A stretch of 64,000 bases of DNA from Macrostomum lignano (GCA_002269645.1 NIVC01000093.1:620001-684000); one strand, 5' to 3'; positions 12,746-64,000 are shown, counted from the stretch's first letter. Notes: generated by a model not told the origin, from the letters alone. Numbers and translations: made by a program.

Positions 12746-12789
12746 TTTAGCAGTTTCGTGTTTTCAAGGTGTTTTATAAAAAAATTATT

Positions 12790-36548: not shown

Positions 36549-37129
36549 TACCAAGCGCAAAAGAGCTTAAATGTAAAGTTCATGTAAATGTTGGTTGTTT
36601 ACAACCGCGAATGCAGACTTTACGCTTCTGCCTTACTTGTAATTGTTTAAGGTTAATTATGAGTTGCTACTCTTTACTTGCTTCGAGGCTGTGCAGCCGA
36701 GGCCTCTTGTAGTGTCCAAATGACTTACATGTAGTTATAAGAAAATCAAATGCTTATTTATCTACGCAGCATATAGATTTATCGATTCCAGCCAAGAGCA
36801 GCTCACAGACTCCTCATGTCTACATGTGACACTTAAAAATGGATCACTAAGGGAGTTTGGCTTGGCCCCATCAATTCTCCCTATCTGTTCGTAGCGTATT
36901 CGCCTTAATAACGCATTTTTAAATCTGTGCCTGTCAGCTCTTCCTGGATGCACATCAGTTCCCGATGTTGCCTTTCAATCATCTTCGTTTGAGATTGCGT
37001 GCGCTGATCGACTCTGGCACAGCTACAGTGTGTAATTCCCTTATCCTCTAGAGGTGCCAATGAATATAAAGTAAAATATGAATATAAAGTACACTAAACA
37101 GAATTGCATTGTTTGCACATGTCTCTCAA

Positions 37130-39138
<2,009 letters not shown>

Positions 39139-41080: not shown

Positions 41081-41084
41081 TTCT

Positions 41085-41157
41085 GTCCGTCTGTCTGTCT
41101 TAGTGTCTGTCTGTCTGTGTCTGTCTGTCTTAGTGTCTGTCAGTCTGTCTGTCTTAG

Positions 41158-41242
<85 letters not shown>

Positions 41243-41243
41243 T

Positions 41244-41338
<95 letters not shown>

Positions 41339-41519
41339 TAGTGTCTGTCTGTCTGTCTGTCTTAGTGTCTTTCTGTCTGTCTTAGTGTCTGTCTGTCTGT
41401 CTGTCTGTCTTAGTGTCTGTCTGTCTGTCTGTCTGTCTTAGTGTCTGTCTGTCTGTCTGTCTTAGTGTCTTTCTGTCTGTCTGTCTTAGTGTCTTTCTGT
41501 CTGTCTGTCTGTCTGTCTT

Positions 41520-41550
<31 letters not shown>

Positions 41551-41551
41551 T

Positions 41552-41606
<55 letters not shown>

Positions 41607-41633
41607 GCCTGTCTGTCTGTCTGTCTGTCTTAG

Positions 41634-41666
<33 letters not shown>

Positions 41667-41817
41667 TAGTGTCTGTCTGTCTGTCTGTCTTAGTGTCTTT
41701 CTGTCTGTCTTAGTGTCTGTCTGTCTGTCTGTCTTAGTGTCTTTCTGTCTGTCTTAGTGTCTGTCTGTCTGTCTGTCTGTCTGTCTTAGTGTCTGTCTGT
41801 CTGTCTGTCTGTCTTAG

Positions 41818-41870
<53 letters not shown>

Positions 41871-41871
41871 T

Positions 41872-41902
<31 letters not shown>

Positions 41903-41903
41903 T

Positions 41904-41982
<79 letters not shown>

Positions 41983-42075
41983 GCCTGTCTGTCTGTCTGT
42001 CTGTCTTAGTGTCTGTCTGTCTGTCTGTCTTAGTGTCTTTCTGTCTGTCTTAGTGTCTGTCTGTCTTTCTGTCTT

Positions 42076-42154
<79 letters not shown>

Positions 42155-42315
42155 TAGTGTCTGTCTGTCTGTCTGTCTTAGTGTCTTTCTGTCTGTCTTA
42201 GTGTCTGTCTGTCTGTCTGTCTGTCTTAGTGTCTGTCTGTCTGTCTGTCTGTCTTTCTGTCTGTCTGTCTGTCTGTCTTAGTGTCTTTCTGTCTGTCTGT
42301 CTGTCTGTCTGTCTT

Positions 42316-42346
<31 letters not shown>

Positions 42347-42347
42347 T

Positions 42348-42430
<83 letters not shown>

Positions 42431-42611
42431 GCCTGTCTGTCTGTCTGTCTGTCTTAGTGTCTGTCTGTCTGTCTGTCTTAGTGTCTTTCTGTCTGTCTTA
42501 GTGTCTGTCTGTCTGTCTGTCTGTCTTAGTGTCTGTCTGTCTGTCTGTCTTAGTGTCTTTCTGTCTGTCTGTCTGTCTGTCTGTCTTTCTGTCTGTCTGT
42601 CTGTCTGTCTT

Positions 42612-42702
<91 letters not shown>

Positions 42703-42703
42703 T

Positions 42704-42740
<37 letters not shown>
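41085..42740. repeat. (TCTG)n microsatellite with TTAGTG interruptions, directly downstream of the GPCR stop codon
   Basis: Direct reading. Confidence 0.97.
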
Positions 42741-42741
<1 letters not shown>

Positions 42742-42753
42742 CCTAACAGCCAT

Positions 42754-44963
<2,210 letters not shown>

Positions 44964-47445: not shown

Positions 47446-50400
47446 ATGAGAGCATCGCTGCACTTTGCTTTTGTTGCGCTTCTCTTTTGTAGTTTAGCAG
47501 CGGGTAAGCAGTGAATCAATAGATGATATTAATTTTAACTTTTCCTACTGTAACCTGAAAAAACTATTAACATTACTTTTGTTTATAATACGAGCGTAGT
47601 CTAGCACTCATTTATAAATACTTTTTAACATTTTTAATATTTTTTATATTTGTACTCCATTTTAAAAAGTCAGTTTTTATTTAAATTCTGTTCTGCTTTT
47701 ATTCTATATCGAGTTTAGATGTGTATTAATTATGCATAACTAATATTAATTTTATTGAATTCTCGTACCCACCAGTATGCATATTTTGTTACAAAAGTAA
47801 TTGACATCAAATAAAGGAAATTCTATATTAACTCAATCAAAATCAAAAACCGAAATTAAAAGTCTTTCTCCATCGCCGTTCAAAGCCCTGCCAGGTTCGA
47901 ACCCCTGCTCCCGCGGTCCCGGCCACTGGTGCAGCAGCCTAGCGGCGGCCAGAGCCTGCGGCGCCATTGCCCACTGCGCCCAACTCTGGAGCCGGAGCTC
48001 GAACCTCGGACCTGACCCGGCCGATGCCACCGAGTCCTGCACCACCTGCCGCCTGCTGGCCGACGATCTGGCGCGCCTCGGCGTTGCTGAAGGTCCAGAC
48101 GGGATGCGCTCAGCCGGTGTCACCGCCTGCGGTCTTGTCGCCGATCCGAGCGCTGCTCGGGCCTGTCAGCGTCTACTGACCGCGGAGTCGGCGAACCTGC
48201 CGGAACTGCTGGCTGCCGGCTTGCAGCCTGGCAGAGCCTGCGTCATGGCCGGCCAGTGTCGACAGCAGGCGATGCTGTCATCGACTAGTGCACCGGCAAC
48301 GCCACAGCCGCCAACTGCCAGCAGTGAGGGAAACTTTTCGTGAATCACGCCTATACTGTTGCTTTAGAATTATAATTATAGAACTTTGGTATTGAAACAG
48401 TCACTGGGATGAGTGTCCTATTGGGTCGCCTTGCGAGACGGGCTTGGGAAGGGCTGTATTTTGTATAGCATTCGCCCCTCTAAGCTTCCCTATCCGGCCC
48501 TCGGATCCTTTGAAACTTTACAATCGCGATCCAGCCCTGTTGAAGGCTTGTGTCTCTTCTCAGCAATCTTCTCTCCTCTCTCTTCTTTTCTCTCCTCTCC
48601 TCTCCTCTCCTCTCCTCTCATCTCATCTCTTCTCTGCTCTTCGCTCATCTCCTCTCCTCTCCCTTCTACTCTCCTCCCTCGTCTCTCCTTTCTTCTTCTA
48701 ATCTTATCTCTCATCTCTATTCTATCTCATCCCTCCTCTGGCCAGCAAGTCACGCGCTAGATTCTTTATCTGGCCCTAGTGGTAAACAAATTTTGCTGAC
48801 CCCTGGACTATAACCTGGCATACTGAACCTCGATTGAGTTCCAGATTGAACTCAATGTAAATTACGTATTACATGTGATCTCTGGTTCGAATCCGTGCGA
48901 GAGTGTACGTGCCTGACGATTAGACAGTCAGGACCCTGTGTGATGAGTGCGTGCCTGAGTACAGTTATTGGCGCGATTTGTGGGACGATCTCGCCAAACA
49001 AGCCATCGCGCTCGGGTGCCCACAACTCTCTCCTGCGAATCTGTATTTTTACAATATATTGATATTTTATAGATATTTTAAAGCGACAAATTGTATTATT
49101 GTCCCCACCCACCCCATATCCCCACTGTGCCAGGCAGCTGCAGCGCCTGTCCCTCTGTTCTAGAAGCCATCGGCACCTCCGTCATCCGAGTGGGCGTCAG
49201 TCCAGCTCACGCCGTCGCCCGTCTGCGCCGTAGAGTTTGTCCAACACTGGCCAACAAGAGGCAGCGAACAATGTGCCACAAACTGGCTGGTCAGCGAGAC
49301 CTATTCCGAATTGTACTGCAGCTAGCTAGGGGCGTTGTGAGTACAGTATGAACTGTTTGAGTTTTTGTTTAATTCAAAATGCCATCTTCATCTTCAGATT
49401 GCCTGTCCAGACACCACCTTCAACCACAAGCCTTCAGCACTCCGAAAAGCGAACACTTCCACAAAGCCTTCCTTCTATAAGTCTGCATTATCTGCTTTCA
49501 GTCGCTTTTCATCTTTCTTCTGCTCCATTGTTCCAGCTGTCACCACGCATGGTGATAAGTTGCGATGACGACCGATCCTATGACCAGTATAAAACGCGCT
49601 GACGTGGCTCGGGGTTTAGTGGCGCTGGTCAAACGACTTTGGCTTAGAAATATCAGACTAGCTAAATGACGACAGAGTGTAATAGTTACAGCTGGCCTTG
49701 CCGCGAAATTGCACTGAGCTAGAGAGAGAGAGAGTGAGAGTTTGATAACATTATCGGAATAAATCTGGACAAGCATGCAGGTACCTGATAAGAAGAAAGC
49801 CTCCAGGGTTATTCAATTCTGGCTTGAATAGGCCGGTTTAGATAAGCAGAAGACAAGTGGAGTTCTTTTATGCCTGCTTGCTTTATGCAAGCGAAATTGA
49901 AGGTCGACAGCAGTTCAGCGATAAGCGCGTCTGACTCTGCACGACCCCTGTGGGCCTGTGTTGGAAGAAAATTAGCCAAGGGGTTTTCGTGTGATTTACA
50001 CCCAACGAGGACCAACCCCCAAGGTACAGAGAGTGTACATGTCGGACTATTTGTCGAAATGGGATGATGTCGCTCAAGGCCTTGCAACTCTTCTGCGAAA
50101 ATTTATGCAGATATAAAAAATACTCTATTCCAGCCACCGAAACAAGTTTGCACCGAATTTCGACTGTGCAGTTCGGCGCCTTTCGCTGGCCACCCAGTGA
50201 TCCAATTGATGCAACTGCAGGTGAGCTACTCGTACTACTTCTAGTACGAATAATGATGAACCTTCCATTCAATATTAAACTCAATCAGACTAGAACTATT
50301 TCATCACCCATCGCAAACGCATGCCCAGACAAATAAGGCCATCAAACTAGCTGAACCAATCGAGTGCCAGGTGTGCGAAGACCTGGTCAACCAGGCCCGG

Positions 50401-53400
50401 CAGATGCTGCGCGACGGCCGCACACAGGCTGAGATTGAAAGCTTCGTCGAAAGCATCGTCTGCAACGCGCTACCATCGTCAGAGAAGGACCAATGCGTCA
50501 AGAATGTGCAGCAATACGGGCCGATTCTGTTTCAACTGCTTGCCTCAGAGCTGGATCCTAAAACTGTCTGCGAGGCTGTGGGCGCCTGCGGAAAAACTGG
50601 CAGAACTGATCGGCTGAAGCCCAAACTGGGTGTCGGTCCGCAGTGCCTGCTGTGCGAGTTCGTCATGCGAGAGGTTGACAAGCAGCTCAGCCAGAACGCT
50701 ACCCAGACCGAGATCGAGGCAGCTCTTCTGCAGGTGTGCTCTCTGCTGCCCCAGACTGTCCGTCAGGAGTGCGACGGCTTTGTGCAGCAGTTCACTCCCA
50801 TCATCATCCAGCTGCTGGTGAACGGCTTGAGTCCACAGAGGATCTGCACAGTGCTCGGTCTCTGCACCGCCTCTACACAACGTCCGCCTGTCACACCGGT
50901 TCGAAAGCCCGTCCAAGCAGGTCCGCAGTGTCTGATTTGCGAGTTCGTCATGCGAGAGGTCGACAAGCAGCTCGGACAGAATGCAACTCAAGCCGAGATC
51001 GAGACAGCTCTTCTGCAGGTGTGCTCTGTGCTGCCCCAGACTGTCCGTCAGGAGTGCGACAACTTCGTTCAGCAGTTCACTCCGACCATCATCCAGCTGC
51101 TGGTGAACGGCCTGAGTCCTCAGCGGGTGTGCTCCGCGCTTGGTCTCTGCTCTCAGCGTGCTCCGCTGCACCGTCTTGCTCCAACGCCGAAGTCGTCAAC
51201 CAAATCGTCATCGACTACCTGCGACGTCTGCCAGACGGTGATGCAGTACGCGAAGTCTCTGCTGCAGGAGAACGCCACCGAGCAGGAGATTGTGCAGCTG
51301 GTTGAGCGAGTTTGCAGCTTCCTACCGACTGCCGAGCAGGCGGCCTGCAAGTCGTTCATCAACGAATACGGAGCGTACGTGATCCAGCTGCTGCTGCAGG
51401 ACGCCAACCCTAGACAGATCTGCCAGGTGAGTTGCTCGAATAATTACTAGATGGTTTTTTTCAAGGCTCGAATTACCATCCTGAGCATTAATTACTCGTA
51501 CAAGCTTTAATGTGTTTGTGCCAAATAGTAATTAATTATGATGATAAGGTCTTGTTTATACCGGTAGATGTCTACAATACTCTAATATAGTAAATCATTA
51601 GTGTTGAAGTGTTTCTAAATTTATTTTCTGAGTGAAGACACAACACGAAAAGCTACGTGTTAAGAGGTATTTGGTGAAATTTCATAGAAGACAGAAATGC
51701 TATAGGAAGGGTTGTGCTGGGCAAATCATCAAAAAGAAATAGGTTAAAAAACAGGTGCAGGCGATTGAGCCAGACAGTCAAGTCATGAATTTCAGTTTAA
51801 AATCAGTTAACTGCGGTTAAATAAAGGCAAGTAGCCACATTTTCACTCTCTCAACAGCTGGTGGGACTCTGTACGACTACTAAAATGACGCCTCCAGTAG
51901 CTTCATTGGTTCGAAAACCGGTCCGAGCGAGTCCGCAATGCCTGACGTGCGAGTTCGTCATGCGAGAGGTCGAGCAGCAGCTCAGTCAGAACGCTACCCA
52001 GACCGAGATCGAGTCAGCTCTTCAACAGGTGTGCTCCCTGCTGCCCCAGACTGTCCGTCAGGAGTGCGACGGCTTTGTGCAGCAGTACACTCCCATCATC
52101 ATCCAGCTGCTGGTGAACGGCCTGAGTCCTCAGCGGATCTGCACAGTGCTCGGTCTCTGCACCCAGGTTCAGCAACCGGTATCGCCAGTTCGCGCCAAGC
52201 TAGGTGCGACGTCAACTGCCTGCGACACCTGCCAGACAGTGGTAGTCTATGTCAAGTCGCTGCTGAAAGAAAACGCAACGGAACAAGAGATCATTGACAC
52301 GGTGGAGAAAGTCTGCAACTTTCTGCCAACAGCTGAGCGACCTACCTGCAAGATGTTTGTTGACCAGTACGGACCGTACGTGATCCAGCTGCTGCTGCAG
52401 GACCTCAACCCGATGCAAGTCTGCCAGGTAACTTCTTTCGGCGCGTACTTTATCTCAATCTAGAGAAAAATCAAAATAATTGACTGATTGCTAACCATTC
52501 CTACTTTCAGTTACTTGGACTTTGTACGCAAAAGAAACTTCAAGCAGCAGTTCGAAAGCAGAAGCAAATCAGTGCCGGTCCGCAGTGCCTGCTGTGCGAG
52601 TTCGTCATGCGAGAGGTTGACAAGCAGCTCAGCCAGAACGCTACCCAGACCGAGATCGAGGCAGCTCTTCAACAGGTGTGCTCCCTGCTGCCCCAGACTG
52701 TTCGTCAGGAGTGCGACGGCTTTGTGCAGCAGTACACTCCCATCATCATCCAGCTGCTGGTGAACGGCTTGAGTCCACAGAGGATCTGCACAGTGCTCGG
52801 TCTCTGCACCGCCTCTACACAACGTCCGCCTGTCACACCGGTTCAAAAGCCCGTCCAAGCAGGTCCGCAGTGTCTGATTTGCGAGTTCGTCATGCGAGAG
52901 GTCGACAAGCAGCTCGGACAGAATGCAACTCAAGCCGAGATCGAGACAGCTCTTCTGCAGGTGTGCTCCCTGCTGCCCCAGACTGTCCGTCAGGAGTGCG
53001 ACAACTTCGTTCAGCAGTTCACTCCGACCATCATCCAGCTGCTGATGAACGGCCTGAGTCCTCAGCGGGTGTGCTCCGCGCTTGGTCTCTGCTCTCAGCG
53101 AGCTCCGCTGCACCGTCTTGCTCCAACGCCGAAGTCGTCAACCAAGTCGTCATCGACTGTCTGCGACGTCTGCCAGACGGTGATGCAGTACGCGAAGTCG
53201 CTGCTGCAGGAGAACGCCACCGAGCAGGAGATCGTGCAGCTGGTTGAGCGAGTTTGCAGTTTCCTACCGACTGCCGAGCAGGCGGCCTGCAAGTCGTTCA
53301 TCAACGAATACGGAGCGTACGTGATTCAGCTGCTGCTGCAGGACGCCAACCCTAGACAGATCTGCCAGGTGAGCCATTTGGATAGTTTTTACATAGAATG

Positions 53401-53762
53401 GATCTATAGCATCATTTATCTCAAGTCATAGGACCTAGAGTCACAGCTGTTTCCAGCAAAGCTGAAGCAAACCAGTGGCTGAAAAAAAGTTACGCTCGTA
53501 TGACCCTCTTTGTGCAATAAGCCATCTCTGGCGTCTCCGTTATGGAAAACCCCGAAGCAAGTCCGATTAGCTACCAAAACAATTTGGCTTCCAGCTACTG
53601 GGCCTGTGCACCAACAGCCGTTCAACCAAGTTGTCAGCGCTGCTGCCCGACCGCACGCTGCGTTTTGTTCAGCCTGCCCGAGGGTTCCCCGCCACCGCCA
53701 ACGGCATGGTGCAAATGGTTCGCGACCATAGACGTGGTCATCGATCCGAGCCGGTCGTCTGA
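47446..53762 (+). CDS. PSAP: Prosaposin-like precursor: signal peptide, one SapA domain, 11 SapB domains (about 1200 aa)
   Basis: Exons 47446-47503, 47886-48323, 49134-49336, 49398-49551, 50134-50220, 50351-51426, 51858-52427, 52511-53368 and 53595-53762 in consistent phase. SapA CSRGPGHWC..C.AIAHC..W; repeated CxxC..C..C..C..GLC. Exons 4-5 and the exon-6 acceptor are less certain. Confidence 0.88.
48555..48735. repeat. CT-rich low-complexity tract in prosaposin intron 2
   Basis: Direct reading. Confidence 0.85.
50635..53374 (+). repeat. Recent intragenic duplication: about 50635-51432 copied at about 52577-53374
   Basis: Constant 1942-bp offset at both ends and few substitutions. Confidence 0.92.
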
Positions 53763-54164
53763 GCACGGCAAAGCGAACTCGTACTAATTAAATTCCGTTT
53801 TTATTTCAGTATATTGAAAGACCCACAGCGCGTTGGTCGCAACAGAGGCTATGGTATGGGTCTCGTTCGATTTGATTTTTCAACTTTCGATTCTCATTTT
53901 CCGCTCTATTTTTCTTATATAGCTAATCATTTAACTTCTTATCCGCTAAATTTATGTAATTTGCGTTGAACCTAAATTGTGATCGGTTTTGTAATTCAAT
54001 AGTCGTATCAGGTGCTAATAAATCACATTTGCACATTTCAGCAATGTTAGTTCATATGCGGTTTTTTGATACTTATATAATTGCCTGCGAGAATTTTCAA
54101 TTCACGATTTTACTCAATTTATAGGAGGTTGCTTCAAAATGGACTTCATGCTTTCCTCCTAAAT

Positions 54165-54349
54165 AACTAACTAACTAACTAACTAACTAAATGACTAACT
54201 AACTGACTAACTAAATAACTAACTGACTAACTAATTAACTAACTAACTAACTAACTAACTAACCAACTAACTAACTGACTAACTAACTAACTAACTAACT
54301 AACTAAATAACAAACTAACTAACTGACTAACTAACTAACTAACTAACTC

Positions 54350-54386
<37 letters not shown>

Positions 54387-54423
54387 ATAACTAACTAACT
54401 AACTAACTAACTGACTAACTAAA

Positions 54424-54478
<55 letters not shown>

Positions 54479-54479
54479 T

Positions 54480-54568
<89 letters not shown>

Positions 54569-54704
54569 GACTGACTAACTAACTAACTAACTAACTGACT
54601 AACTAACTAACTAACTAACTAACTAAATAACTAACTAACTAACTAACTAACTAACTGACTAACTAACTAACTAACCAACTAACTAACTAACTAACTAACT
54701 AACC

Positions 54705-54744
<40 letters not shown>

Positions 54745-54745
54745 G

Positions 54746-54776
<31 letters not shown>

Positions 54777-54825
54777 GACTAACTAACTAGCTAACTAACT
54801 AACTAACTAACTAACTGACTAACTG

Positions 54826-54860
<35 letters not shown>

Positions 54861-55085
54861 GACTAACTAACTAACTGACTAACTAACTAACTAACTGACT
54901 GACTAACTAACTGACTAACTAACTAACTAGCTAACTAACTAACTAACTGACTAACTAACTAACTGACTAACTAACTAACTAACTAACTGACTAACTAACT
55001 AACTAACTAACTAACTAACGAACTAACTAACTAACTGACTAACTAACTAACGAACTAACTAACTAACTGACTAAATAACTAACTG

Positions 55086-55136
<51 letters not shown>

Positions 55137-55157
55137 GACTGACTAACTAACTAACTG

Positions 55158-55192
<35 letters not shown>

Positions 55193-55209
55193 GACTGACT
55201 AACTAACTG

Positions 55210-55250
<41 letters not shown>

Positions 55251-55289
55251 ATAACTAACTAACTAACTAACTGACTAACTAACTAACTG

Positions 55290-55320
<31 letters not shown>

Positions 55321-55455
55321 GACTAACTAACTAACTGACTTACTAACTAACTGACTAACTAACTAACTGACTAACTAACTAACTAACTAACTGACTAACT
55401 AACTAACTGACTAAGTAACTAACTGACTAACTAACTAACTGACTAACTAACTAGC
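54165..55455. repeat. (TAAC)n microsatellite, about 1.3 kb
   Basis: Direct reading. Confidence 0.97.
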
Positions 55456-55692
55456 TATCTCGGCTTAAGGGGGAAGAAAAAGAAAATAAAGATAAAGAAT
55501 ACGAAGTTAGGGCGGTCGCAGCCCAGAATTCAGCGTTTATGTTTTCTAACTTAAACAAAGGTGAAAAGGTTAGGCGGTTGGAGGAGATATATATTTGAGT
55601 ACATTGTGCGTACAGTGAAATAGAGAAAATAATTAATCTATCGATGAAACTTTTGGATAGCCTTAGGCCAACTCATTTTTCGATACTCCTTA

Positions 55693-55960
55693 TTGAGCCA
55701 TGGCATCTCAGCATCTCCCCATTGAGCCATGGCATCTCAGCATCTCCCCATTGAGCCATGCCATCTCAGCATCTCCCCATTGAGCCATGGCATCTCAGCA
55801 ACTCCTCCATTGAGCCATGGCATCTCAGCAACTCCTCCATTGAGCCATGGCATCTCAGCAACTCCTCCATTGAGCCATGGCATCTCAGCAACTCCTCCAT
55901 TGAGTCATGGCATCCCAGGAACTCCTCCATTGAGTCATGGCATCTCAGCAACTCCCTCTT
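55693..55960. repeat. 30-bp tandem repeat (CCATTGAGCCATGGCATCTCAGCAACTCCT)n downstream of methyltransferase A
   Basis: About 8-9 units; paralogous array at 58652-58862. Confidence 0.92.
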
Positions 55961-56167
55961 TAAAATGAGTGAAAGTAACATAAATATTGAAATGGTTTTT
56001 TAATTTACCTTCCGTTCCATACCTTGATACATATATGTAGGAACGGGCATTAACTACAATACAGCAAAGTGACTTACAGAATTTTACGTCCTATAAAATT
56101 ATTTTGGTACGCAAACCAGGAGGTAATAGACAAACGGCGAAACAGACTCGCATTTTTGCAACAAAGG

Positions 56168-57667
56168 TCACAGTATGCTGCAACAGCATCGAAAAATTGT
56201 TTCTTCGTTAACGGCAGGACCGGCGCAGTGCCCAGATTTTACGTTGCGCAAATCGCCTTCGAAATACCGTTGTTTGTCATGTCCCTGCTCTACCTGACAA
56301 ATTTCTGTATGATTGTTCATAAAAGACTCGCTCTGCTCATCCACCATTTGAACTCTGCACTGCTCCTGCAACACCTGCTGTCTCTGCCGTTCCTGTTGCT
56401 GCTTCTGTGTTTGCTGCTCTTGCAAACGCCGTTGCTGCTCCAGCAACTGTTGCTGTCTCTGCTGCTCCACCAACTCTTGCTGTCTCTGCTGCTCCAGCAA
56501 CTCTTGCTGTCTCTGCTGCTCCAGCAACTGCTGCTGTCTCTGCTGCTCCAGCAACTCTTGCTGTCTCTGCTTCTGCTCCAGCAACTCTTGCTGTCTCTGC
56601 TGCTGCTCCAGCAGCTGTTGCTGTCTCTGCTTCTGCTCCAGCAGCTGTTGCTGTCTCTGCTGCTGCTCCAGCAGCTGTTGCTGTCTCTGCTTCTGCTCCA
56701 GCAACTGTTGCTGTCTCTGCTGCTGCTCCAGCAGCTGTTGCTGTCTCTGCTTCTGCTCCAGCAACTGTTGCTGTCTCTGCTGCTGCTCCAGCAGCTGTTG
56801 CTGTCTCTGCTTCTGCTCCAGCAACTGTTGCTGTCTCTGCTGCTGCTCCAGCAGCTTTAGCTGTCTCTGCTGCTTCAGCAACTTTTGCTGTCTCTGCTGC
56901 TCCAGCAGCTTCTGCTTTCGCTGCTGCTCCAGCAACTTCTGTTTCTTAAGAGATTCGAGAGCATCATTCTTGGCTGGAACATAACTCAGGTGAAAGTTTC
57001 CTCGTTTTCTCGTGTACAGACAAATTCTCTCGCCTGTAAATGTTCGCCTAAATCCGAACTCCTTCAGTTGCTGTACTTGTCTGATCTCAATATCCATTAC
57101 AAGAATGTATCCCACACTGCTCAGCAACTGAGGAAGCTTCACGCCAACTAGACTCAAATTCCTACCAGCGTTAGCAAAACTCAGACTGATGATGTCGAAT
57201 GGTTGAGCCGTTAGCTTTCGGTCAAGCACAAAGTCCTCCATGGGCATTTCAATGAACTCCCGTCTCGATGTGTTGAAACACCAATCCGATGTGGCCTGTG
57301 CGAATTCGCCGTCAAAAGCGCTCCAGTCCCAGGGAAACGCGTCAACTCCAATGCAGCTCTGCTGCAGCAGCTTACCGCCATGCACCTGACTAACCTCGCC
57401 TTTGTGTACAACATCTTTGATGGCTCTGACGACTCCAAGCAGGTCGCTGCCGGGACCGCAACCGAGCGACAAGATCCGGATCTTCCGAGGCTGCGGCTCG
57501 CTGCACACTGACTGCAGAAGTTGCTTCACCTCGGTTCGTATTTGCATCCGCATGAGTTCAGACTTACGTATAAACTGTTCTTGTGTATAAGCCTTGCGGA
57601 ATTCCGGGTTCCTGTAGAATCTAAAGTCCTCTTTGTGCTTGGCATCAAGCCATTCCTGGTAGTCCAT
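56168..57667 (-). CDS. Putative class I SAM-dependent methyltransferase, copy A, with a Gln/Leu-rich coiled-coil tail (499 aa)
   Basis: Single ORF with motif I RILSLGCGPGSDL, post-I CIGVD and motif IV-like FDIISLSF; (EQQQRQQQLL)n encoded by 27/30-bp repeats at about 56430-56945. Confidence 0.8.
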   Translation of the reverse strand: MDYQEWLDAKHKEDFRFYRNPEFRKAYTQEQFIRKSELMRMQIRTEVKQLLQSVCSEPQPRKIRILSLGCGPGSDLLGVVRAIKDVVHKGEVSQVHGGKLLQQSCIGVDAFPWDWSAFDGEFAQATSDWCFNTSRREFIEMPMEDFVLDRKLTAQPFDIISLSFANAGRNLSLVGVKLPQLLSSVGYILVMDIEIRQVQQLKEFGFRRTFTGERICLYTRKRGNFHLSYVPAKNDALESLKKQKLLEQQRKQKLLEQQRQQKLLKQQRQLKLLEQQQRQQQLLEQKQRQQQLLEQQQRQQQLLEQKQRQQQLLEQQQRQQQLLEQKQRQQQLLEQQQRQQQLLEQKQRQQQLLEQQQRQQELLEQKQRQQELLEQQRQQQLLEQQRQQELLEQQRQQELVEQQRQQQLLEQQRRLQEQQTQKQQQERQRQQVLQEQCRVQMVDEQSESFMNNHTEICQVEQGHDKQRYFEGDLRNVKSGHCAGPAVNEETIFRCCCSIL

Positions 57668-58651
57668 GATTTTTTGCTCCTGCTCTACTCTTAGTCTAAG
57701 CTCTCAGCTTTGTATCTGCTTCCATTTAATACGCAAATGTATTCATTTCTTAGAAATTCTGTCTAGTATCAGTATTGCACACAAATAGAAATATGCACGC
57801 AGAAATTTCTGTTCTCAACCAGAGTTTATAGACATCGCGTACATTAAAGTGCAAAGAACTTTCGGGCAGGTGTTATTTTCTGCATCCAGTGGAACTTTGT
57901 GTATGGCGAGAGAGTAGCAAACTCACAGGAAAACTTTTTTTCGAAAACAAAAACTATAAAAGAATACTTATGAATAAATTAATGGTTAGACAGAGACAGA
58001 CAGGTAGACAGAAAAAAAGCTATTATACATGTAGATTAAGTTAGTAAAAACTAACCTTAGACTAACGAACCAACTAACAAACAGCTAACTGACTAATATA
58101 CAAAAAACAAACAAACTTAATAACTGGTGTCTCCCAGAATACCTGGCCCTGGCAGAAAAATCGGGCTTCGCTCTCGGTCTGGCGCATTTTGAGCTTTCGG
58201 CTGTCGTATATTTTACAGTCCTGTGTATCAACCCCCCCCCTTGATGGCCTAATTGAAGTAGCTGCATGGTGGCTTAAGTTTTATTGGGCAAAATTATTAA
58301 AGTATGTAACACGCTAATGAATCCTTTAACTGATGGATTGATTAGAATTCATGTTAGCATCCGCTTGGGTCGCAATCTATTATGTCAAAGCGCAAAGGTG
58401 CATTGATGAATGTTGGTTTACACATCGAAATGAACCAAACGAATTTATCAAGCATTGTTCACTGGGCCATTTTATTGGAAAGCGATTGCGTTTCGTCAGC
58501 TGTGATGCCAATTCTCGCCATAGTAGGTGGTCTTTTTCTGATAAGTTGTAAGTCGATCCGTACGCCGTTCTGCACTTCTCTTCGAATATCACCAAGGTGC
58601 GATCGTTCTGATACTCAGTGGACATGCTTGTGAAGACTAGATTTTTACAGC

Positions 58652-58862
58652 CCCATTGAGCCTTGAAATCTCAGCAACTCATCCATTGAGCCATGGCATC
58701 TCAGCATCTCCTCATTGAGCCATGGCATCTCAGCAACCACCCATTGAGTCTTGGCATCTCAGCAACTCCTCCATTAAGCCATGGCATCTCAGCAACCACC
58801 CATTGAGCCGTGGCATCTCAGCAACTCCCACATTGAGCCTTGGCATGTCAGTAACTTCCCCT
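58652..58862. repeat. 30-bp tandem repeat downstream of methyltransferase B
   Basis: Paralog of 55693-55960. Confidence 0.9.
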
Positions 58863-59028
58863 TTAAAATGAGTGAAGACAACATGAATATTGAAACGGTT
58901 TTTAATTTACTTTCGCTTACATATGTATTAATACATAGTGACATACATGTACAAGAGTTTACAGCCTGTAAAATTATTTTGTTACACATACCAAATACTT
59001 GTAAGAGATAAACAGTAAAGCAGACTCG

Positions 59029-59690
59029 TGTAGTAAGTAAACTCAGACAGTTATCGCGAGGCGGAAAATAGTACGACTCTCACTAGAGCCCACAATCTGT
59101 TAGTATAGCTACATTTGGGGTGCAAACACCCCTCCGATTATTTATTGATTGGGCGTGGCCCGATATACATAAGTAAAGTTTACGGTAGAGAGGATTTAAA
59201 GTTCGAGCATTACTTTGTGAATAAACGAATTCACAGTTCACAGATATTGACAGTTGACAGGTTGGTTTACACAGTTCAAATCATTTGTACTGCTTCTTGT
59301 CACCGCACTTCGCCGCGCGCGGATGCGGACGCGACGCCAGCGGCCCCTCTCGAGTCTCCGAATCTCCAGGAAGGACGCCGGCCGTTGTCGCTGGCGGAGC
59401 CTCCGAGACCGGCGGATCTGGGGTGACCAGCCTGACGGCTGTGTAATGACGCGAGTTACAGTAACAACGGCGCCAGCTGGAAGTGCCGACGCGGTGCAGC
59501 CTCAGGGAGTTTCCAGACACTCGTTCGACTTTCCAGGCGCCGCTCTTGAAAGGCGTCTGCGCCTTCCGTGCTCCGACGCGACGCCAGCACGACATCGCCG
59601 ACTCGGATCCCGCCGCTATGTGGCCTACGCTTTGCGTCTGCGTGTCGCTTCATCGCCGCCTTGGCGTTGGCATCGGTTTGACGCAGCTTC
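59029..59690 (-). mobile_element. Ty3/Gypsy 3' fragment: integrase C-terminal region, PPT and LTR-like end
   Basis: DANAKAAMKRHADAKRR..IRVGDVVL, then after a +1 shift RRVGARKAQTPFKSGAWKVERVSGNSL, stop at 59281. GGAGGGG is followed by TGT (59128) ... ACA (59029). Absent from paralog A. Confidence 0.7.
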
Positions 59691-60514
59691 TGCTTCAGTA
59701 AATTTTGCGGTCTCTGCTTCTGCTTCAATAAATTTTGCGGTCTCTGCTGCTCCAGCAACTCTTGCTGGCTTTGCTGCTGCTCCAGCAAGTTTTGTTTCTT
59801 AAGAGTTTCAAGGGCATAATCTTTGGTTGGAACATGTGGTTGGTGAAATTTTCCTTGTTCTCTTGTGTACAGACAAATTTTTTTGCCAGTAAATGTTCGT
59901 CCAAATCCGTACTCCTTCAGTTGCTTCACTGGTCTAATGTCATTATCCATCACAAGAATGTATCCCACATTGCTCAGCAACTGAGGCAGCTTCACGCCAA
60001 CTAGACTCAAATTCCTACCAGCGTCGACAAAACTCAGACTGATGATGTCGAATGGTTGAGCCGTTAGCTTTCGGTCAAGCACAAAGTCCTCCATCGGCAT
60101 TTCAATGAACTCGTGTCTTGATGTCTTGAAACACCAAGCCGATCTGGCCTGTGCGAATAGGACGTCGAAAGCGCTCCAGTCCCACTGAAACGCGTCAACT
60201 CCAATGCAGCTCAGCTGCAGCACCTGACTAACCTCGCCTCTGTGTACAACATTTTTGATGGCCCTGACGACTCCAAGCAGGTCGCTGCCCGGACCGCAAC
60301 CGAGCGACAAGATCCGGATCTTCCGAGGCTGCGGCTCGCTGCACACGGACTGCAGAAGTTGCTTCACCTCGGTTCTTATTTGCGTCTGCACGAGTCTAAA
60401 CTTGCGTATGAACTCTCCTTGTGTATAAGCCTTGCGGAATTCCGGGTCGCTGTAGAATCTCAAGTCCTCTTTGTGCTTGGCATCAAGCCATTGCTGGTAA
60501 ATTGGACAGTCCAT
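59456..60514 (-). CDS. Putative SAM-dependent methyltransferase, copy B, fused to a Gypsy integrase tail
   Basis: Close paralog of A (same RILSLGCGPGSDL, CIGVD and FDIISLSF motifs). Shared ATG at 60514; the frame stays open to 60646, where a possible acceptor TTTCTAG lies. Confidence 0.78.
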   Translation of the reverse strand: MDCPIYQQWLDAKHKEDLRFYSDPEFRKAYTQGEFIRKFRLVQTQIRTEVKQLLQSVCSEPQPRKIRILSLGCGPGSDLLGVVRAIKNVVHRGEVSQVLQLSCIGVDAFQWDWSAFDVLFAQARSAWCFKTSRHEFIEMPMEDFVLDRKLTAQPFDIISLSFVDAGRNLSLVGVKLPQLLSNVGYILVMDNDIRPVKQLKEYGFGRTFTGKKICLYTREQGKFHQPHVPTKDYALETLKKQNLLEQQQSQQELLEQQRPQNLLKQKQRPQNLLKQKLRQTDANAKAAMKRHADAKRRPHSGGIRVGDVVLASRRSTEGADAFQERRLESRTSVWKLPEAAPRRHFQLAPLLL

Positions 60515-60989
60515 GATCTTTTGCTCTGGCTCTACTCGTAGGATTTCAGCTCTCTGCTTTGCATCTGCCTCCTTTTGATACGCAGACTTGTGCAGATACG
60601 AGCAATTCTTTCTTGCAAATTCCAGCCAAATATCGGTAGTGCACACACTAGAAAGATGTACGCATTAATTTTCTTCTCCACCTTTTAAAACTCCACTGCG
60701 GAGTGTACATCGCGTACATTAAAGTACACAGAAATTTCAGGCAGCTGGTATTGAAATGAAACAAAAGCGCCGTTAGCAAGAGCTAGGGTGGAAGAAATCA
60801 GCCGACGCGCTTGATTCGTGAACAAGCATCCAGCCTTGGCAGCAACTCCCCATGCAGATGCACAAGATCTGCATGCCTAAAATAGCCCTGATGATCGGCG
60901 AGCGAGAGGCCCAGCCATCATGCGACCCTCGAGTGATTCATGAAACTCCTCTGGCCGACGGCGCCTATTGGGCCTCCCCATTCCACTTT

Positions 60990-61690
60990 CTTCCCCTATT
61001 CCTCCTTTGCTCTTTTACAGTGTGTTAGCTTATAAAATATACTGATTGAAGAGGAAAGATCCTCGCCAGAAGTTTGAGAATGTGACTCTGAGATCGCACT
61101 GAGAAAGTACCATTGAGTCCATTGTCTTCCTGAACTGTTGACAGAAGGAAACGGTTATATGAAAAAATCCATATAATTTTTCATTAATTCAGTTGGTTCC
61201 ACTGACCGCGTGAGTCGCCGCTAGACAGAAGTCTCAGACACACCATGCAGTTATCGCTCTGCTGCATGTCTTCAACAGTCATCCGAATAAATCGAGAACT
61301 GAGACTTTCCTGTCTTCAGTAAAGAAAGACTTCGAACTAGACAAGACCAATGGACGAAGATCAAGAAGCGACACAGTTTACCCTTCCAAGAAGCTTTCAT
61401 TGAGCGATCTGCACAATCAATTTGGTCAAGACGGCGTTTATCGACGTCCTATTCAATTGCTATGTACACTCAGCCAGCATCCCGATCTGACTTTCTACCA
61501 GACACTGTGTCAATTTGTCGAGTCTCCGTGCCCAGTCCTATTTGCGTCACTGTTTAGGGCATGAAAAGCCCATTCAATTTGTCGAGTTTCCGAGTTCACG
61601 TCAATCCCCCTCTCAGATCTGATTAAAAAGTCAAGAGGATATGCTGGTACAATTCATCCACTGTTGTCACAAGTTCACTTTGCCCCTTGA
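60990..61690 (-). mobile_element. Possible decayed CR1-like RT remnant
   Basis: Weak minus-strand resemblance to the RT QGS..GP/ADD/W-N region (..VEDMQQSDN..QWNQLN); many stops. Confidence 0.3.
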
Positions 61691-61771
61691 CCAAGTTTCG
61701 TGTTTCTCAACAACTGAAACTCAACTGCAAGTTATCAAGTGGGACTGCAAAGGGAATACTCTACATATGGA

Positions 61772-62122
61772 AGACGCGAATGAACTCCCGTCTTGATGTC
61801 TTGAAACACCAAGCCGATGTGGCCTGTGCGAATTCGCCGTCAAAAGCGCTCCAGTCCCAGGGAACGCGCCAACTCCAATGCAGCTCAGCTGCAGCAGCCT
61901 ACCGCCATGCACCTGACTAACCTCGCCTTTGTACAACATCTTTGATGGCTCTGACGACTCCAAGCAGGTCGCTGCCGGGACCGCAACCGAGCGACAAGAT
62001 CCGGATCTCCCGAGGCTGCGGCTCGCTGCACACGGACTGGAGAAGTTGCTTCACCTCTGTTCGTATTTGCATCCGCATGAGTTCAGACTTACGTATAAAC
62101 TGTTCTTGTGTATAGGCCTTGC
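61772..62122 (-). pseudogene. Methyltransferase copy C, truncated and frameshifted fragment
   Basis: Near-identical to A/B from KAYTQEQF to EFI; a 2-nt deletion (CCTTTGTACAAC vs CCTTTGTGTACAAC) follows motif I; both ends missing. Confidence 0.88.
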
Positions 62123-62469
62123 TATGGCCTATGATATAGGCCTAGGCCTTGTGACTAACTGACTAACTGGCTTACTAACTAACTGTCCCTGACTGACCTA
62201 CGGGTATAGGAAGCAACGAGTTCTGCCGAAGCAAAAATTCCATTCTTTTAATTCAAAATCCATTCTATAGGACAGCAACATGTAAAACTTTATTGTACCA
62301 CTTGACTTCCAATCCAAGCTGAGCAGGTCAAATTTTTTTTGCCAGCCATGCAAAATTCACGCTCTACATTCGCTGCTTTCTACATGTCACTTGACAGTAG
62401 ACAAACTAACCAATATCGCCATTAGAATCGCAACAAAGCGGCGTTACTATTGCTTTGACACGGCTGTAC

Positions 62470-62600
62470 GAGGCTGGCCCAGCAATTGAGGATCTGGGAG
62501 GCTGGCCCAGCAATTAAGGATCTGGGAGGCTGGCCCAGCAACTGAGGATCTTGGAGGCTGGCCTAGCAACTGAGGATCTGGGAGACTGGCCCAGCAACTG
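62470..62600. repeat. 30-bp tandem repeat (GGCTGGCCCAGCAACTGAGGATCTGGGA-like)n
   Basis: About 4-5 units. Confidence 0.85.
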
Positions 62601-63283: not shown

Positions 63284-63618
63284 TCAATCAAGCGGTCCGG
63301 CAGCATCTGACAGCTCAGCCTCGTACCGGTAGATCGGCACCCCTGGCAGGATGATCGACGTAAATTGGTCGGTCCTGATGAAGCCCAGCCTCTCGTAGAT
63401 GTCGACGGCGTATTGCTGCAGCTGCGTGGTGCCCAGCTGCATCCGCCGGTAGCCCCGGTTGGCGCACAGTCGCATGAGGCGCCGGCAGACGGCGTCGCCA
63501 ACTCCGTGGCCCCGGTAGGCGGGCAGGACGCCGAGGCGCTGCAACTCGCAGGTGTCGCCGTCCAGGTGCAAACTGGCAACTGTGCCGACAAGGGGAGGCT
63601 GCTGCTGGCCGGCTTCGG
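63284..63618 (-). CDS. GNAT N-acetyltransferase (NAT8/Camello-like), last exon; upstream exons probably outside the window
   Basis: LVGTVA..ELQRLGVLPAYRGHGVG (acetyl-CoA motif RxxGxG)..GYRRMQLGTTQLQQYAVDIYERLGF; acceptor AATGCAG at 63619. Confidence 0.85.
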
Positions 63619-63784
63619 CTGCATTGGGGTGAATTTGGTGCCATTCTTCAGGGATTTTCAGTTTTTTTATTGAAATCGTCAAGGGCTTATAGCGATTTTA
63701 AGGTGAAGTGACTCGAGGAGACTCTAAAACGACGAGATTTCACAGTAGTAAGTCGCCAAAAAGTTTTCAAAGAGTCAATTTGCG

Positions 63785-64000
63785 GCGTTTTGATTGTCTG
63801 CGACTCTGAAATCACTCTGGGGCCGTAGAGTCGCATTTGAGGCGTTTTAACTTTTGATTGTCTGCGACTCTGAAATCACTCTGGGGCCGTAGAGTCGCAT
63901 TTGAGGCGTTTTAACTTTTGATTGTCTGCGACTCTGAAATCACTCTGGGGCCGTAGAGTCGCATTTGAGGCGTTTTAACTTTTGATTGTCTGCGACTCTG
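63785..64000. repeat. 64-bp tandem repeat with an internal hairpin; runs off the right edge
   Basis: Units at 63791, 63855 and 63919; each contains TGCGACTCT...AGAGTCGCA. Confidence 0.92.

What the first reader, a model, noticed from the sequence alone, without database searches (positions are those of the whole stretch)
55690..62122. Tandem family of uncharacterised SAM-dependent methyltransferases with swappable C-termini
Seen: a unit of about 2.1 kb (upstream block, uninterrupted MTase ORF, 3' block, 30-bp array) occurs twice about 2.9 kb apart, plus a third fragment. The catalytic core of about 225 aa (Y..PEFRKAY..., ILSLGCGPGSDL, IGVD, FDIISLSF) is conserved, while the tails differ completely (Gln coiled coil vs Gypsy-derived). 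I cannot assign it to a named metazoan MTase. The intron-free coding region contrasts with the multi-intron neighbours. Inference: a rapidly evolving birth-and-death family, possibly horizontally acquired or TE-associated, with tails acting as targeting modules. Substrate unknown (RNA, DNA, protein or small molecule).
Basis: partly seen in the sequence, partly recalled or inferred. Interest (0 to 1): 0.8.

Follow-up and report, generated by a model that had tools for sequence, protein, structure and literature searches.

The report
Flatworm-specific tandem methyltransferase genes, unannotated
Two neighbouring intron-free genes and one broken fragment in the flatworm Macrostomum lignano encode a very divergent SAM-dependent methyltransferase, whose only detectable relative is a multi-exon gene in the same genome. 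This is a lineage-restricted gene family growing by local duplication, not a horizontal transfer, and its substrate is still unknown.

Summary
The repeat is real. Copy A (56168-57667, minus strand, 499 aa) and copy B (59456-60514, 352 aa from the shared ATG) are 82% identical over a 240-aa core. Fragment C (61779-62122) is a frameshifted piece, 96% identical to A.

The window is Macrostomum lignano Mlig_3_7, contig NIVC01000093.1:620001-684000.

- **Relatives.** An exhaustive HMMER scan of 1.84 billion representative proteins found one true relative: M. lignano Mlig012580, a multi-exon paralogue (about 27-30% identity) that passes Pfam Methyltransf_23. No bacterial, viral or other animal relative was found.
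- **Fold.** Motifs, a low-confidence AlphaFold model and Foldseek all point to a generic class I Rossmann methyltransferase. No subfamily or substrate can be assigned.
- **Selection.** A versus B gives dN/dS 0.49 (p=0.006). Coding indels are all multiples of three, and flanks are more diverged (80% vs 90%). At least one copy has therefore been under constraint.
- **Tails.** A carries 18 Gln-rich 9/10-residue repeats and ends in CCCSIL, a candidate prenylation (CaaX) signal. B keeps only about four repeats before a 660-bp foreign segment. A Gypsy origin for that segment was not verifiable.

Horizontal transfer and transposon carriage are not supported. The finding is a modestly interesting new member of a known superfamily.

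The parts
55685..55955 (-). Non-coding 29/30-bp minisatellite, 9 units, 3' of copy A. Unit on the gene strand: GGAGTTGCTGAGATGCCATGGCTCAATGGA.
   Evidence: TRF and pattern search (15 matches in the window, 0 expected). Unit lengths of 29 and 30 bp are not multiples of three.
55956..56167 (-). 3' untranslated block of copy A, conserved in B. It contains an ATTAAA hexamer at 56004-55999, a candidate polyadenylation signal about 45 nt before the array.
   Evidence: Read from the sequence. The 105-nt segment compared (55956-56060) is 79% identical to the B block. 56075-56150 matches 58950-59028. The poly(A) role is inference.
56168..56432 (-). Unique C-terminal region of A (about 70 aa) ending FRCCCSIL-stop. 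CSIL is a CaaX box (codons 56171-56182) preceded by two further Cys.
   Evidence: Translation. tblastn finds no second copy in the window. Prenylation is inferred from the motif only.
56433..56937 (-). Coding 27/30-bp minisatellite of A: 18 units of 9 or 10 residues (LLEQQQRQQQ / LLEQKQRQQQ), 49% Gln.
   Evidence: TRF gives 17.5 copies. Unit parsing. All unit lengths are multiples of three.
56942..57667 (-). Methyltransferase core of copy A (aa 1-242): motif I ILSLGCGPGSDL (G69/G71/G73), post-I IGVD109, motif II FDIISLSF, motif III-like LSSVGYILVMD.
   Evidence: AlphaFold topology. Foldseek returns class I methyltransferases only among the listed hits. HMMER link to P0001.
57668..57877 (-). 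Upstream (5') block of copy A shared with B. TATAAA lies at 57830-57825, which is not conserved in B.
   Evidence: BLAST block 56839-57877 against 59686-60752. 79.6% identity with indels that are not multiples of three.
58651..58856 (-). Non-coding 29/30-bp minisatellite, about 7 units, 3' of copy B.
58857..59028 (-). 3' block of copy B, homologous to A's 3'UTR.
59029..59685 (-). B-specific GC/CpG-rich segment that replaces A's distal repeats, unique tail and CaaX. B's reading frame runs into it and stops at 59456.
   Evidence: No similarity to A, to the rest of the window or to L001. No Pfam hit in the frames tried. Sequence read.
59456..60514 (-). Copy B coding sequence from the ATG shared with A (352 aa). 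The ORF is open upstream to a GTG at 60646. The core (aa 1-240) is 82% identical to A. It keeps ~4 Gln-rich units (59690-59794).
60515..60752 (-). Upstream block of copy B, homologous to 57668-57877.
61779..62122 (-). Fragment C: a pseudogene piece covering aa 25-137 of A. It is 96% identical to A in DNA, carries 2-bp and 1-bp deletions, and is truncated at both ends.

Best explanation
The locus is a young local (tandem) duplication of an intron-free gene. That gene belongs to a Macrostomum-restricted, highly divergent family of class I (Rossmann-fold) SAM-dependent methyltransferases.

Copy A is the intact form. It has an N-terminal catalytic domain of about 235 aa, which binds SAM through the GCGPG loop and Asp109. 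This is followed by a stalk of about 190 aa built from 18 Gln/Leu/Glu/Arg-rich 9/10-residue repeats encoded by a coding minisatellite. Last comes a short unique region ending in CCCSIL, which would tether the enzyme to a membrane by geranylgeranylation and possibly palmitoylation.

Copy B is a derivative. A rearrangement replaced its distal repeats and C-terminus with about 660 bp of unrelated DNA, so it lacks the anchor. Copy C is a dead fragment.

The duplication arose by unequal exchange in DNA that is rich in mini- and microsatellites. It did not arise by horizontal transfer or transposition.

Shown: the duplication, homology to Mlig012580, the class I fold and motifs, and coding constraint.
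Inferred: catalytic activity, the membrane anchor, the duplication mechanism, and a non-nucleic-acid substrate (small molecule, lipid or protein). The last is suggested by the Methyltransf_23/11-type motifs and by the absence of DNA/RNA-base methyltransferase motifs.
For: - **Duplication.**
- **Organism.** L002 from NIVC01000093.1 is identical to window 21207-41689. The MRPS23 cluster-mate is M. lignano PAA81917.1.
- **Family.** An exhaustive hmmsearch of 1.84 billion representatives gives one true hit, P0001 (M. lignano A0A1I8FYA5), at E=4.4e-9 over profile positions 7-210. tblastn of A on its locus gives E=6e-15 and 27% identity over 208 aa. P0001 passes Pfam PF13489 (28.5 bits against a cutoff of 27). 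B has sub-threshold Methyltransf_23 and Methyltransf_36 hits.
- **Fold.** The AlphaFold model (pLDDT 52.6, pTM 0.56) has the b1-aA-b2...b6-b7 order. Foldseek returns 143 PDB hits at E<=1e-3; those listed (the top 50) are almost all class I SAM-dependent methyltransferases plus one spermidine synthase of the same fold. The named BFVD hits are mostly methyltransferases or capping enzymes.
- **Constraint.** dN=0.088, dS=0.181, dN/dS=0.49, Fisher p=0.006. Coding DNA is 90% identical against 79-80% in the homologous flanks. Coding indels are 9 and 15 nt and repeat units are 27/30 bp, whereas flanking indels are arbitrary and the non-coding array has 29/30-bp units.
- **Native origin.** The paralogue has at least 11 exons. 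GC3 is 0.55, against 0.51-0.55 in the paralogue. There were no hits in viral, prokaryotic-genome or metagenome collections.
- **Anchor.** The ORF ends in CCCSIL.
- **Duplication substrate.** (TTAG)n relics lie at 58049-58125 and 62152-62197, in addition to the large (CTAA)n at 54159-55457.
Against: - Neither A nor B is an annotated gene product in the deposited genome, and no close protein exists in a 15-billion-protein collection. There is therefore no evidence of expression here. This is weak evidence, because the GenBank annotation dropped transcripts that overlap repeat annotation (PMC5730564) and A contains a 500-bp tandem repeat.
- dN/dS of 0.49 shows only moderate constraint. It would also fit one constrained and one neutral copy.
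- The structural model has low confidence, so fold matches are generic.
- The CaaX motif could be a chance ending. Its a1 residue is Ser, and neither B nor the paralogue has such a motif.
- A 10-residue repeat is not a canonical heptad, so 'coiled coil' is unverified.
- Genome-wide copy number was not obtainable, so a dispersed repeat family cannot be strictly excluded.
Confidence: 0.6

Rival explanations
1. All three copies are non-functional relics. On this view they are decaying partial duplicates of the methyltransferase-encoding part of a Mlig012580-type gene, and their ORFs are still open only because the last duplication is recent.
For: - The copies are unannotated, and no matching protein exists anywhere in the collection.
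- B has a chimeric tail and C is frameshifted.
- dN/dS of 0.49 is far from strong constraint.
- The copies are embedded in satellite-rich DNA.
Against: - A and B are only about 27-30% identical to the paralogue, yet they keep a 240-codon open frame and every class I motif aligned to it. That much divergence without constraint would have destroyed the frame.
- dN/dS is significantly below 1 (p=0.006).
- All coding indels and repeat-unit lengths are multiples of three, while neighbouring non-coding homologous DNA has arbitrary indels.
- The 499-codon ORF ends in a recognisable C-terminal signal.
Confidence: 0.15
2. This is the first reader's idea: the methyltransferase was acquired horizontally or is carried by a transposable element, and its C-terminal tails are exchangeable targeting modules.
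For: - The coding region is intron-free in a genome that averages 4.9 introns per gene.
- The family is absent from other flatworms and animals in the search.
- A foreign GC-rich segment forms B's tail.
- A detached fragment C exists.
Against: - No bacterial, archaeal, viral or metagenomic relative was found by exhaustive HMMER or by three collection scans.
- The only relative is a multi-exon gene of the same genome.
- Codon GC3 equals that paralogue.
- There are no terminal inverted repeats, LTRs, transposase, RT or integrase domains in or around the units.
- B's tail shares its proximal repeats and 3'UTR with A, which points to replacement by rearrangement, not to a module swap.
Confidence: 0.1
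3. The enzyme is a nucleic-acid methyltransferase, for example a cap guanine-N7-like RNA methyltransferase, and not a small-molecule or protein methyltransferase.
For: - The best PDB sequence matches, though marginal, are human RNMT at motif I (E=0.04-0.07).
- RNMT and Ecm1 appear among the Foldseek PDB hits. The top BFVD hit is a putative viral cap N7 methyltransferase.
Against: - The sequence match covers only 32 residues around GxGxG.
- There was no Pfam PF03291 hit at E<=1.
- Foldseek scores for O-, N- and C-methyltransferases of small molecules and for PrmA are equal or better.
- There is no (D/N/S)PP(Y/F/W/H) motif and no PC(Q/K) motif.
- No RNA-binding or capping domain is attached.
Confidence: 0.1

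Closest known systems
Macrostomum lignano Mlig012580 (UniProt A0A1I8FYA5 / GenBank PAA65732.1), automatically named 'Methyltransf_25 domain-containing protein'
   Same: It is the only detectable homologue. The whole domain aligns, including the N-terminal helices (W..A..K....Y..P.....YT), SLGCGPGS[DE]LL, SCIGVD.F.W, FDI..LSF and the C-terminal CL..R strand. It is from the same species.
   Different: Identity is only 27-30%. Mlig012580 encodes 726-1004 aa from at least 11 exons, with the methyltransferase domain in the C-terminal half after a long uncharacterised N-terminal region. It has no Gln-rich repeats and no CaaX. Like A and B, it is experimentally uncharacterised.
Pfam PF13489 Methyltransf_23 and the generic class I SAM-dependent methyltransferases (e.g. 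B. subtilis YcgJ 1XXL, M. tuberculosis Rv0187 6JCL)
   Same: Motif I (GxGxG), the acidic post-I residue, motif II (FDxxxS) and a seven-strand Rossmann topology. Foldseek probability is 1.0 with TM about 0.40-0.45.
   Different: A has no Pfam hit, and B scores 16 bits against a cutoff of 27. Identity to any solved structure is 12-20%. The family-specific N-terminal helical extension and the W-rich segment after strand 2 have no counterpart I could identify.
mRNA cap guanine-N7 methyltransferase (RNMT; PDB 3BGV, 5E8J, 8Q69)
   Same: Motif I context: LGCG.G.DLL. It also appears in the fold-search lists.
   Different: The match is limited to about 32 residues. There is no PF03291 hit and no capping context.
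CaaX-prenylated, palmitoylated membrane-anchored proteins (Ras/Rho/Ral-type C-termini; comparison from my own knowledge, not tested)
   Same: Copy A ends in Cys-Ser-Ile-Leu-stop with two more Cys immediately upstream. This is the pattern read by geranylgeranyltransferase I and then by palmitoyl transferases (for the sequence).
   Different: No GTPase domain is present. I know of no characterised class I methyltransferase anchored in this way. The motif is absent from B and from the paralogue. Modification was not tested.

Membership tests
Class I (Rossmann-fold) SAM-dependent methyltransferase superfamily | Motif I: a glycine-rich loop (GxGxG) after strand 1 | tested here: met
   GCGPG at A 69-73, B 72-76 and P0001 497-501. 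It aligns to RNMT motif I.
Class I (Rossmann-fold) SAM-dependent methyltransferase superfamily | An acidic residue at the end of strand 2 that binds the SAM ribose | tested here: met
   IGVD109 is invariant in A, B and P0001. It lies at the end of predicted strand 103-109. The SAM contact itself is inferred.
Class I (Rossmann-fold) SAM-dependent methyltransferase superfamily | A seven-stranded sheet with the order b1-aA-b2-...-b5-aE-b6-b7 hairpin | tested here: met
   The AlphaFold model has strands at 63-68, 103-109, 138-140, 157-163, 182-191, 215-219 and 224-227. Of 143 PDB Foldseek hits at E<=1e-3, those listed (the top 50) are almost all class I methyltransferases. Model confidence is low (pLDDT 52.6).
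Pfam PF13489 Methyltransf_23 | An HMM score at or above the gathering cutoff (27 bits) | tested here: inconclusive
   A has no hit, and B scores 16.4 bits at E=0.008. The paralogue P0001 scores 28.5 bits, so membership holds only transitively.
Class I SAM-dependent methyltransferase (function) | SAM binding and methyl transfer | not testable with these tools
   This needs recombinant protein and binding or transfer assays.
N6-adenine / N4-cytosine DNA methyltransferases and HemK-type glutamine methyltransferases | Catalytic motif IV (D/N/S)PP(Y/F/W/H) | tested here: not met
   The motif does not occur in A, B or P0001.
C5-cytosine methyltransferases (Pfam PF00145) | The catalytic PC(Q/K) motif and a Pfam match | tested here: not met
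   There is no PCQ/PCK and no Pfam hit at E<=1.
mRNA cap guanine-N7 methyltransferase (PF03291) | A family-wide HMM or sequence match beyond motif I | tested here: not met
   Only 32 residues match, at E=0.04-0.07. There is no Pfam hit.
Ty3/Gypsy-derived sequence (tail of copy B) | Recognisable integrase, chromodomain, SH3 or other retroelement domains, or LTRs | tested here: not met
   There was no Pfam hit at E<=10 for the tail, the overlapping frame or a hand-joined frame. No repeat copies were found in the window or L001, and no LTR or TIR. A weak by-eye resemblance to integrase C-termini (GDVVL...W.V......LRL) remains a lead only.
CaaX-prenylated proteins | Cys at position -4 from the C-terminus, an aliphatic residue at -2, and a residue at -1 that selects the transferase | tested here: met
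   A ends ...RCCCSIL-stop. X=Leu predicts geranylgeranylation, which is established knowledge. The modification itself was not tested.
Horizontally transferred gene | Closest relatives lie in a distant donor lineage, and the gene is absent from relatives of the host | tested here: not met
   There were no prokaryotic, viral or metagenomic relatives. The closest relative is an intron-bearing gene of the same genome.

The most novel reading that the evidence does not exclude
Copy A represents a previously unannotated, Macrostomum-specific enzyme architecture. A divergent class I methyltransferase would be held at a membrane by a geranylgeranyl/palmitoyl anchor, on a long Gln-rich helical stalk whose length varies through a coding minisatellite. 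It would act on a lineage-specific membrane-proximal substrate. Copy B would be a soluble, anchor-less derivative.
Probability: 0.15. Interest if true: 0.5.

Novelty: new member of a known kind. Interest (0 to 1): 0.3.

Why it matters
If A is expressed, it adds an unannotated, genus-restricted enzyme family to a flatworm model used for regeneration and reproduction research. It also shows how the deposited annotation can lose real genes that contain tandem repeats. The family illustrates how fast a Rossmann methyltransferase can drift beyond the reach of Pfam. It also shows how satellite-rich DNA drives gene birth, tail remodelling and gene death within a few kilobases. It does not bear on a long-standing open question, and it gives no evidence of horizontal transfer.

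Tried and rejected
- **Word-indexed protein searches.** The search with the A core found nothing, and so did the search with alignment A2. The second search missed P0001 even though P0001's own domain is a row of the query. Negatives from that tool are therefore weak, and I rely on the exhaustive HMMER run.
- **Spurious HMMER hit.** Its second hit, P0002 (1880 aa, repetitive, five short stretches, E=2e-4), was judged spurious.
- **Collection scans.** Viral, prokaryotic-genome and metagenome scans gave pattern hits but no tblastn confirmation.
- **PDB sequence searches.** Only marginal matches at motif I or to YcgJ.
- **NCBIfam.** Nothing meaningful.
- **First AlphaFold run.** With two sequences it was unusable (pLDDT 34).
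- **Rfam on the whole window.** No match.
- **Exact-product look-ups.** A, B (from either start) and my 156-aa MRPS23 ORF were not on record.
- **Pfam on B's tail and spacer ORFs.** Nothing.
- **Inverted-repeat search.** Only short intragenic chance pairs.
- **Literature.** No paper mentions Mlig012580 or this family.
- **Not attempted.** I considered checking the homeologous contig that carries PAA81917.1. The methyltransferases lie about 25 kb from MRPS23, beyond the 10-kb flank limit.

Full report
**What is in the sequence**

The minus strand of 55685-62122 holds two uninterrupted ORFs and one fragment.
- Copy A is 56168-57667 (499 aa).
- Copy B is 59456-60646 (396 aa from a GTG). The ATG that aligns with A's start is at 60514, which gives 352 aa.
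- Fragment C (61779-62122) covers aa 25-137 of A. It is 96% identical to A in DNA and is broken by 2-bp and 1-bp deletions.

BLASTP of A against B gives E=6e-148, and the 240-aa cores are 82% identical. At DNA level, 56839-57877 matches 59686-60752 (82.5%) and 55746-56021 matches 58651-58923 (86%). The repeated unit is therefore about 2.1-2.2 kb and the two copies are offset by about 2.9 kb.

The 29/30-bp array sits 3' of both units and nowhere else in the window: 15 matches against 0 expected. No further copy of the core or of A's unique tail exists in the window.

- The tails do not differ completely. B retains about four of the Gln-rich units (59690-59794) and a stretch of A's 3'UTR (58950-59028 matches 56075-56150). 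Only about 59029-59685 is foreign: a GC/CpG-rich segment into which B's frame runs until a stop at 59456.
- A Gypsy origin for that segment found no support. There was no Pfam hit at E<=10 for the tail, the overlapping frame or a hand-joined frame. There was also no other copy in the 89 kb of M. lignano DNA compared (the window plus L001). A by-eye resemblance to integrase C-termini remains only a lead.
- Minisatellites with 17-40-bp units are everywhere in this window. The array matters only as a marker of the duplicated segment.

**Source organism**

- The window's MRPS23 protein (P0008) is on record from GenBank assembly GCA_002269645.1, contig NIVC01000093.1.
- The fetched locus L002 is base-for-base identical to window 21207-41689. 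The window is therefore Macrostomum lignano Mlig_3_7, NIVC01000093.1:620001-684000.
- Its cluster-mate at 90% identity or more is M. lignano PAA81917.1. The next best hit is from Echinococcus.

**Relatives**

An exhaustive hmmsearch of a profile of A and B was run against 1.84 billion representatives of about 15 billion proteins. It returned no hit below 1e-10 and only two below 1e-3.
- P0002 is a repetitive 1880-aa protein hit in short stretches. I regard it as spurious.
- P0001 (E=4.4e-9, profile positions 7-210) is M. lignano A0A1I8FYA5. It clusters with GenBank PAA65732.1 / Mlig012580.

The alignment spans the entire domain, including the N-terminal helices, SLGCGPGS[DE]LL, SCIGVD.F.W and FDI..LSF. 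On its genomic locus L001 the paralogue has at least 11 exons over 5.4 kb. A's core aligns to one large exon there at 27% identity, E=6e-15.

The only detectable relative is therefore an intron-bearing paralogue in the same genome. Scans of viral, prokaryotic-genome and metagenome DNA found nothing. GC3 of A and B (0.55) equals that of the paralogue (0.51-0.55). Horizontal transfer is not supported.

One caveat applies. The word-indexed search tool returned nothing even when P0001's own domain was part of the query, so I give its negatives no weight.

**What kind of protein it is**

- **Pfam.** A has no hit. B has sub-threshold Methyltransf_23 and Methyltransf_36 hits (E=0.004-0.008). The paralogue passes the Methyltransf_23 gathering score (28.5 against 27 bits).
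- **Motifs.** The sequence shows the class I motifs: GCGPG (motif I), IGVD109 (post-I acidic residue), FDIISLSF (motif II) and LSSVGYILVMD (motif III-like).
- **Model.** With three sequences AlphaFold gives a low-confidence model (pLDDT 52.6, pTM 0.56). Its strand and helix order is nonetheless that of a class I methyltransferase.
- **Fold search.** Foldseek returns 143 PDB matches at E<=1e-3 with TM about 0.40-0.45. The 50 listed are, with one exception (a spermidine synthase, which shares the fold), class I SAM-dependent methyltransferases with very diverse substrates. They include catechol-type O-methyltransferases, CysG, BezA, PrmA and RNMT. The viral library gives the same generic picture.
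- **Sequence searches of the PDB.** These give only marginal motif I or YcgJ matches.
- **Excluded motifs.** There is no (D/N/S)PP(Y/F/W/H) or PC(Q/K) motif. This argues against N6-A/N4-C, HemK-type and C5-cytosine chemistry.

The fold class is established. The subfamily and substrate are not.

**Is it a live gene?**

Evidence for coding constraint:
- A versus B gives dS=0.18, dN=0.088 and dN/dS=0.49, which differs from 1 at p=0.006.
- Coding DNA is 90% identical, while the homologous 5' and 3' flanks are 79-80% identical.
- Coding indels are 9 and 15 nt, and A's coding minisatellite uses only 27- or 30-bp units.
- By contrast, flanking indels have arbitrary lengths, and the non-coding array mixes 29- and 30-bp units.
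- A and B keep an open 240-codon core and all motifs at only about 27-30% identity to the paralogue. That would not survive without long-term constraint.

Evidence against, and its limits:
- Neither product is annotated, and no close protein exists in the collection.
- However, the GenBank annotation of Mlig_3_7 deliberately dropped transcripts overlapping repeat annotation (PMC5730564). A contains a 500-bp tandem repeat, so this absence says little about expression.

**Anatomy of copy A and likely mechanism**

A consists of four parts:
- the catalytic domain (aa 1-~235);
- 18 units of LLEQQQRQQQ / LLEQKQRQQQ type (aa ~245-420; 49% Gln);
- a unique stretch of about 70 aa;
- the ending FRCCCSIL-stop.

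CSIL is a CaaX box with X=Leu. From established knowledge of prenylation, this predicts geranylgeranylation, and the two adjacent Cys are candidate palmitoylation sites.

My best reading is a SAM-dependent methyltransferase held at a membrane on a long helical Gln-rich stalk. It would act on a small-molecule, lipid or protein substrate. SAM binding, catalysis, the anchor and the helical nature of the stalk are all inferences. A 9/10-residue period is not a canonical heptad, so 'coiled coil' is unverified.

B lost the distal stalk and the anchor through a rearrangement, so it is either a soluble variant or on its way to decay. C is dead.

Degenerate (TTAG)n tracts lie at 58049-58125 and 62152-62197, in addition to the 1.3-kb (CTAA)n at 54159-55457. 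The window also has a high general satellite density. Together these make unequal exchange the simplest route to the tandem arrangement. No terminal inverted repeats, LTRs or transposon proteins flank the units.

**Comparison with what is known, and verdict**

The locus works like, and on the tested features belongs to, the class I SAM-dependent methyltransferase superfamily. Its nearest Pfam family is Methyltransf_23, a link that holds through its paralogue only. It is not a member of any named metazoan methyltransferase family that I could detect.

Its only relative is itself uncharacterised, and no paper mentions it. I rate it a new member of a known kind: a lineage-restricted, fast-evolving, locally duplicating enzyme family.

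The HGT/TE origin and 'swappable tails' do not. The 'targeting' idea survives only as the CaaX inference for copy A. Interest is modest (0.3).

Noticed in passing
window 1-64000: The window is Macrostomum lignano Mlig_3_7 (GCA_002269645.1), contig NIVC01000093.1:620001-684000. Locus L002 is identical to window 21207-41689.
   Followed up: yes
window 56171-56182: Copy A ends in CCCSIL-stop, a CaaX-type prenylation motif with extra cysteines. It is absent from B and from the paralogue. It is a candidate membrane anchor for a methyltransferase.
   Followed up: partly
window 58049-58125, 62152-62197, 54159-55457: Degenerate (TTAG)n relics lie upstream of A and of C and resemble the 1.3-kb (CTAA)n array downstream of A. 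They are a possible substrate for the unequal exchange that made the tandem copies.
   Followed up: partly
window 50371-53431 (+): Three long open frames each encode several saposin B domains (SapB_1/SapB_2, E down to 1e-53). There are at least 10 domains in all, with a 285-bp internal DNA repeat. This is a multi-saposin gene next to the methyltransferases.
   Followed up: partly
window 191-5189, 11086-12748, 31973-36549: A very dense series of minisatellite arrays has 17-40-bp units, each 0.2-1.3 kb long. Several create long spurious ORFs with no Pfam hit or only sub-threshold matches.
   Followed up: partly
window 37129-39138, 41082-42741, 43927-44553: Kilobase-scale tetranucleotide microsatellites are present: (ATAG)~495, (TCTG)n and (ATCT)~158. 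They produce 'SIYLSIYL' pseudo-ORFs of up to 735 aa.
   Followed up: yes
window 63788-64000: A 64-bp tandem repeat with 100% identical copies (3.3 copies visible) runs off the end of the window.
   Followed up: no
window 63284-63682 (-): An open frame with a GNAT acetyltransferase domain (PF00583, E=2e-14). It is probably one exon of a gene just upstream of fragment C.
   Followed up: no
window 27867-29775 and 31207-31689 (+): An annotated SBDS gene and an intron-free MRPS23 gene (160 aa). A second M. lignano contig carries a copy at 90% identity or more (PAA81917.1), consistent with the known duplicated genome.
   Followed up: partly
window 62470-62600: A 28-bp minisatellite (4.7 copies, 92% matches) lies between fragment C and the GNAT exon.
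   Followed up: no
tool behaviour: The word-indexed protein search returned no hit for an alignment that contained P0001's own domain, although P0001 is in the collection. Negative results from that tool should not be trusted here.
   Followed up: partly
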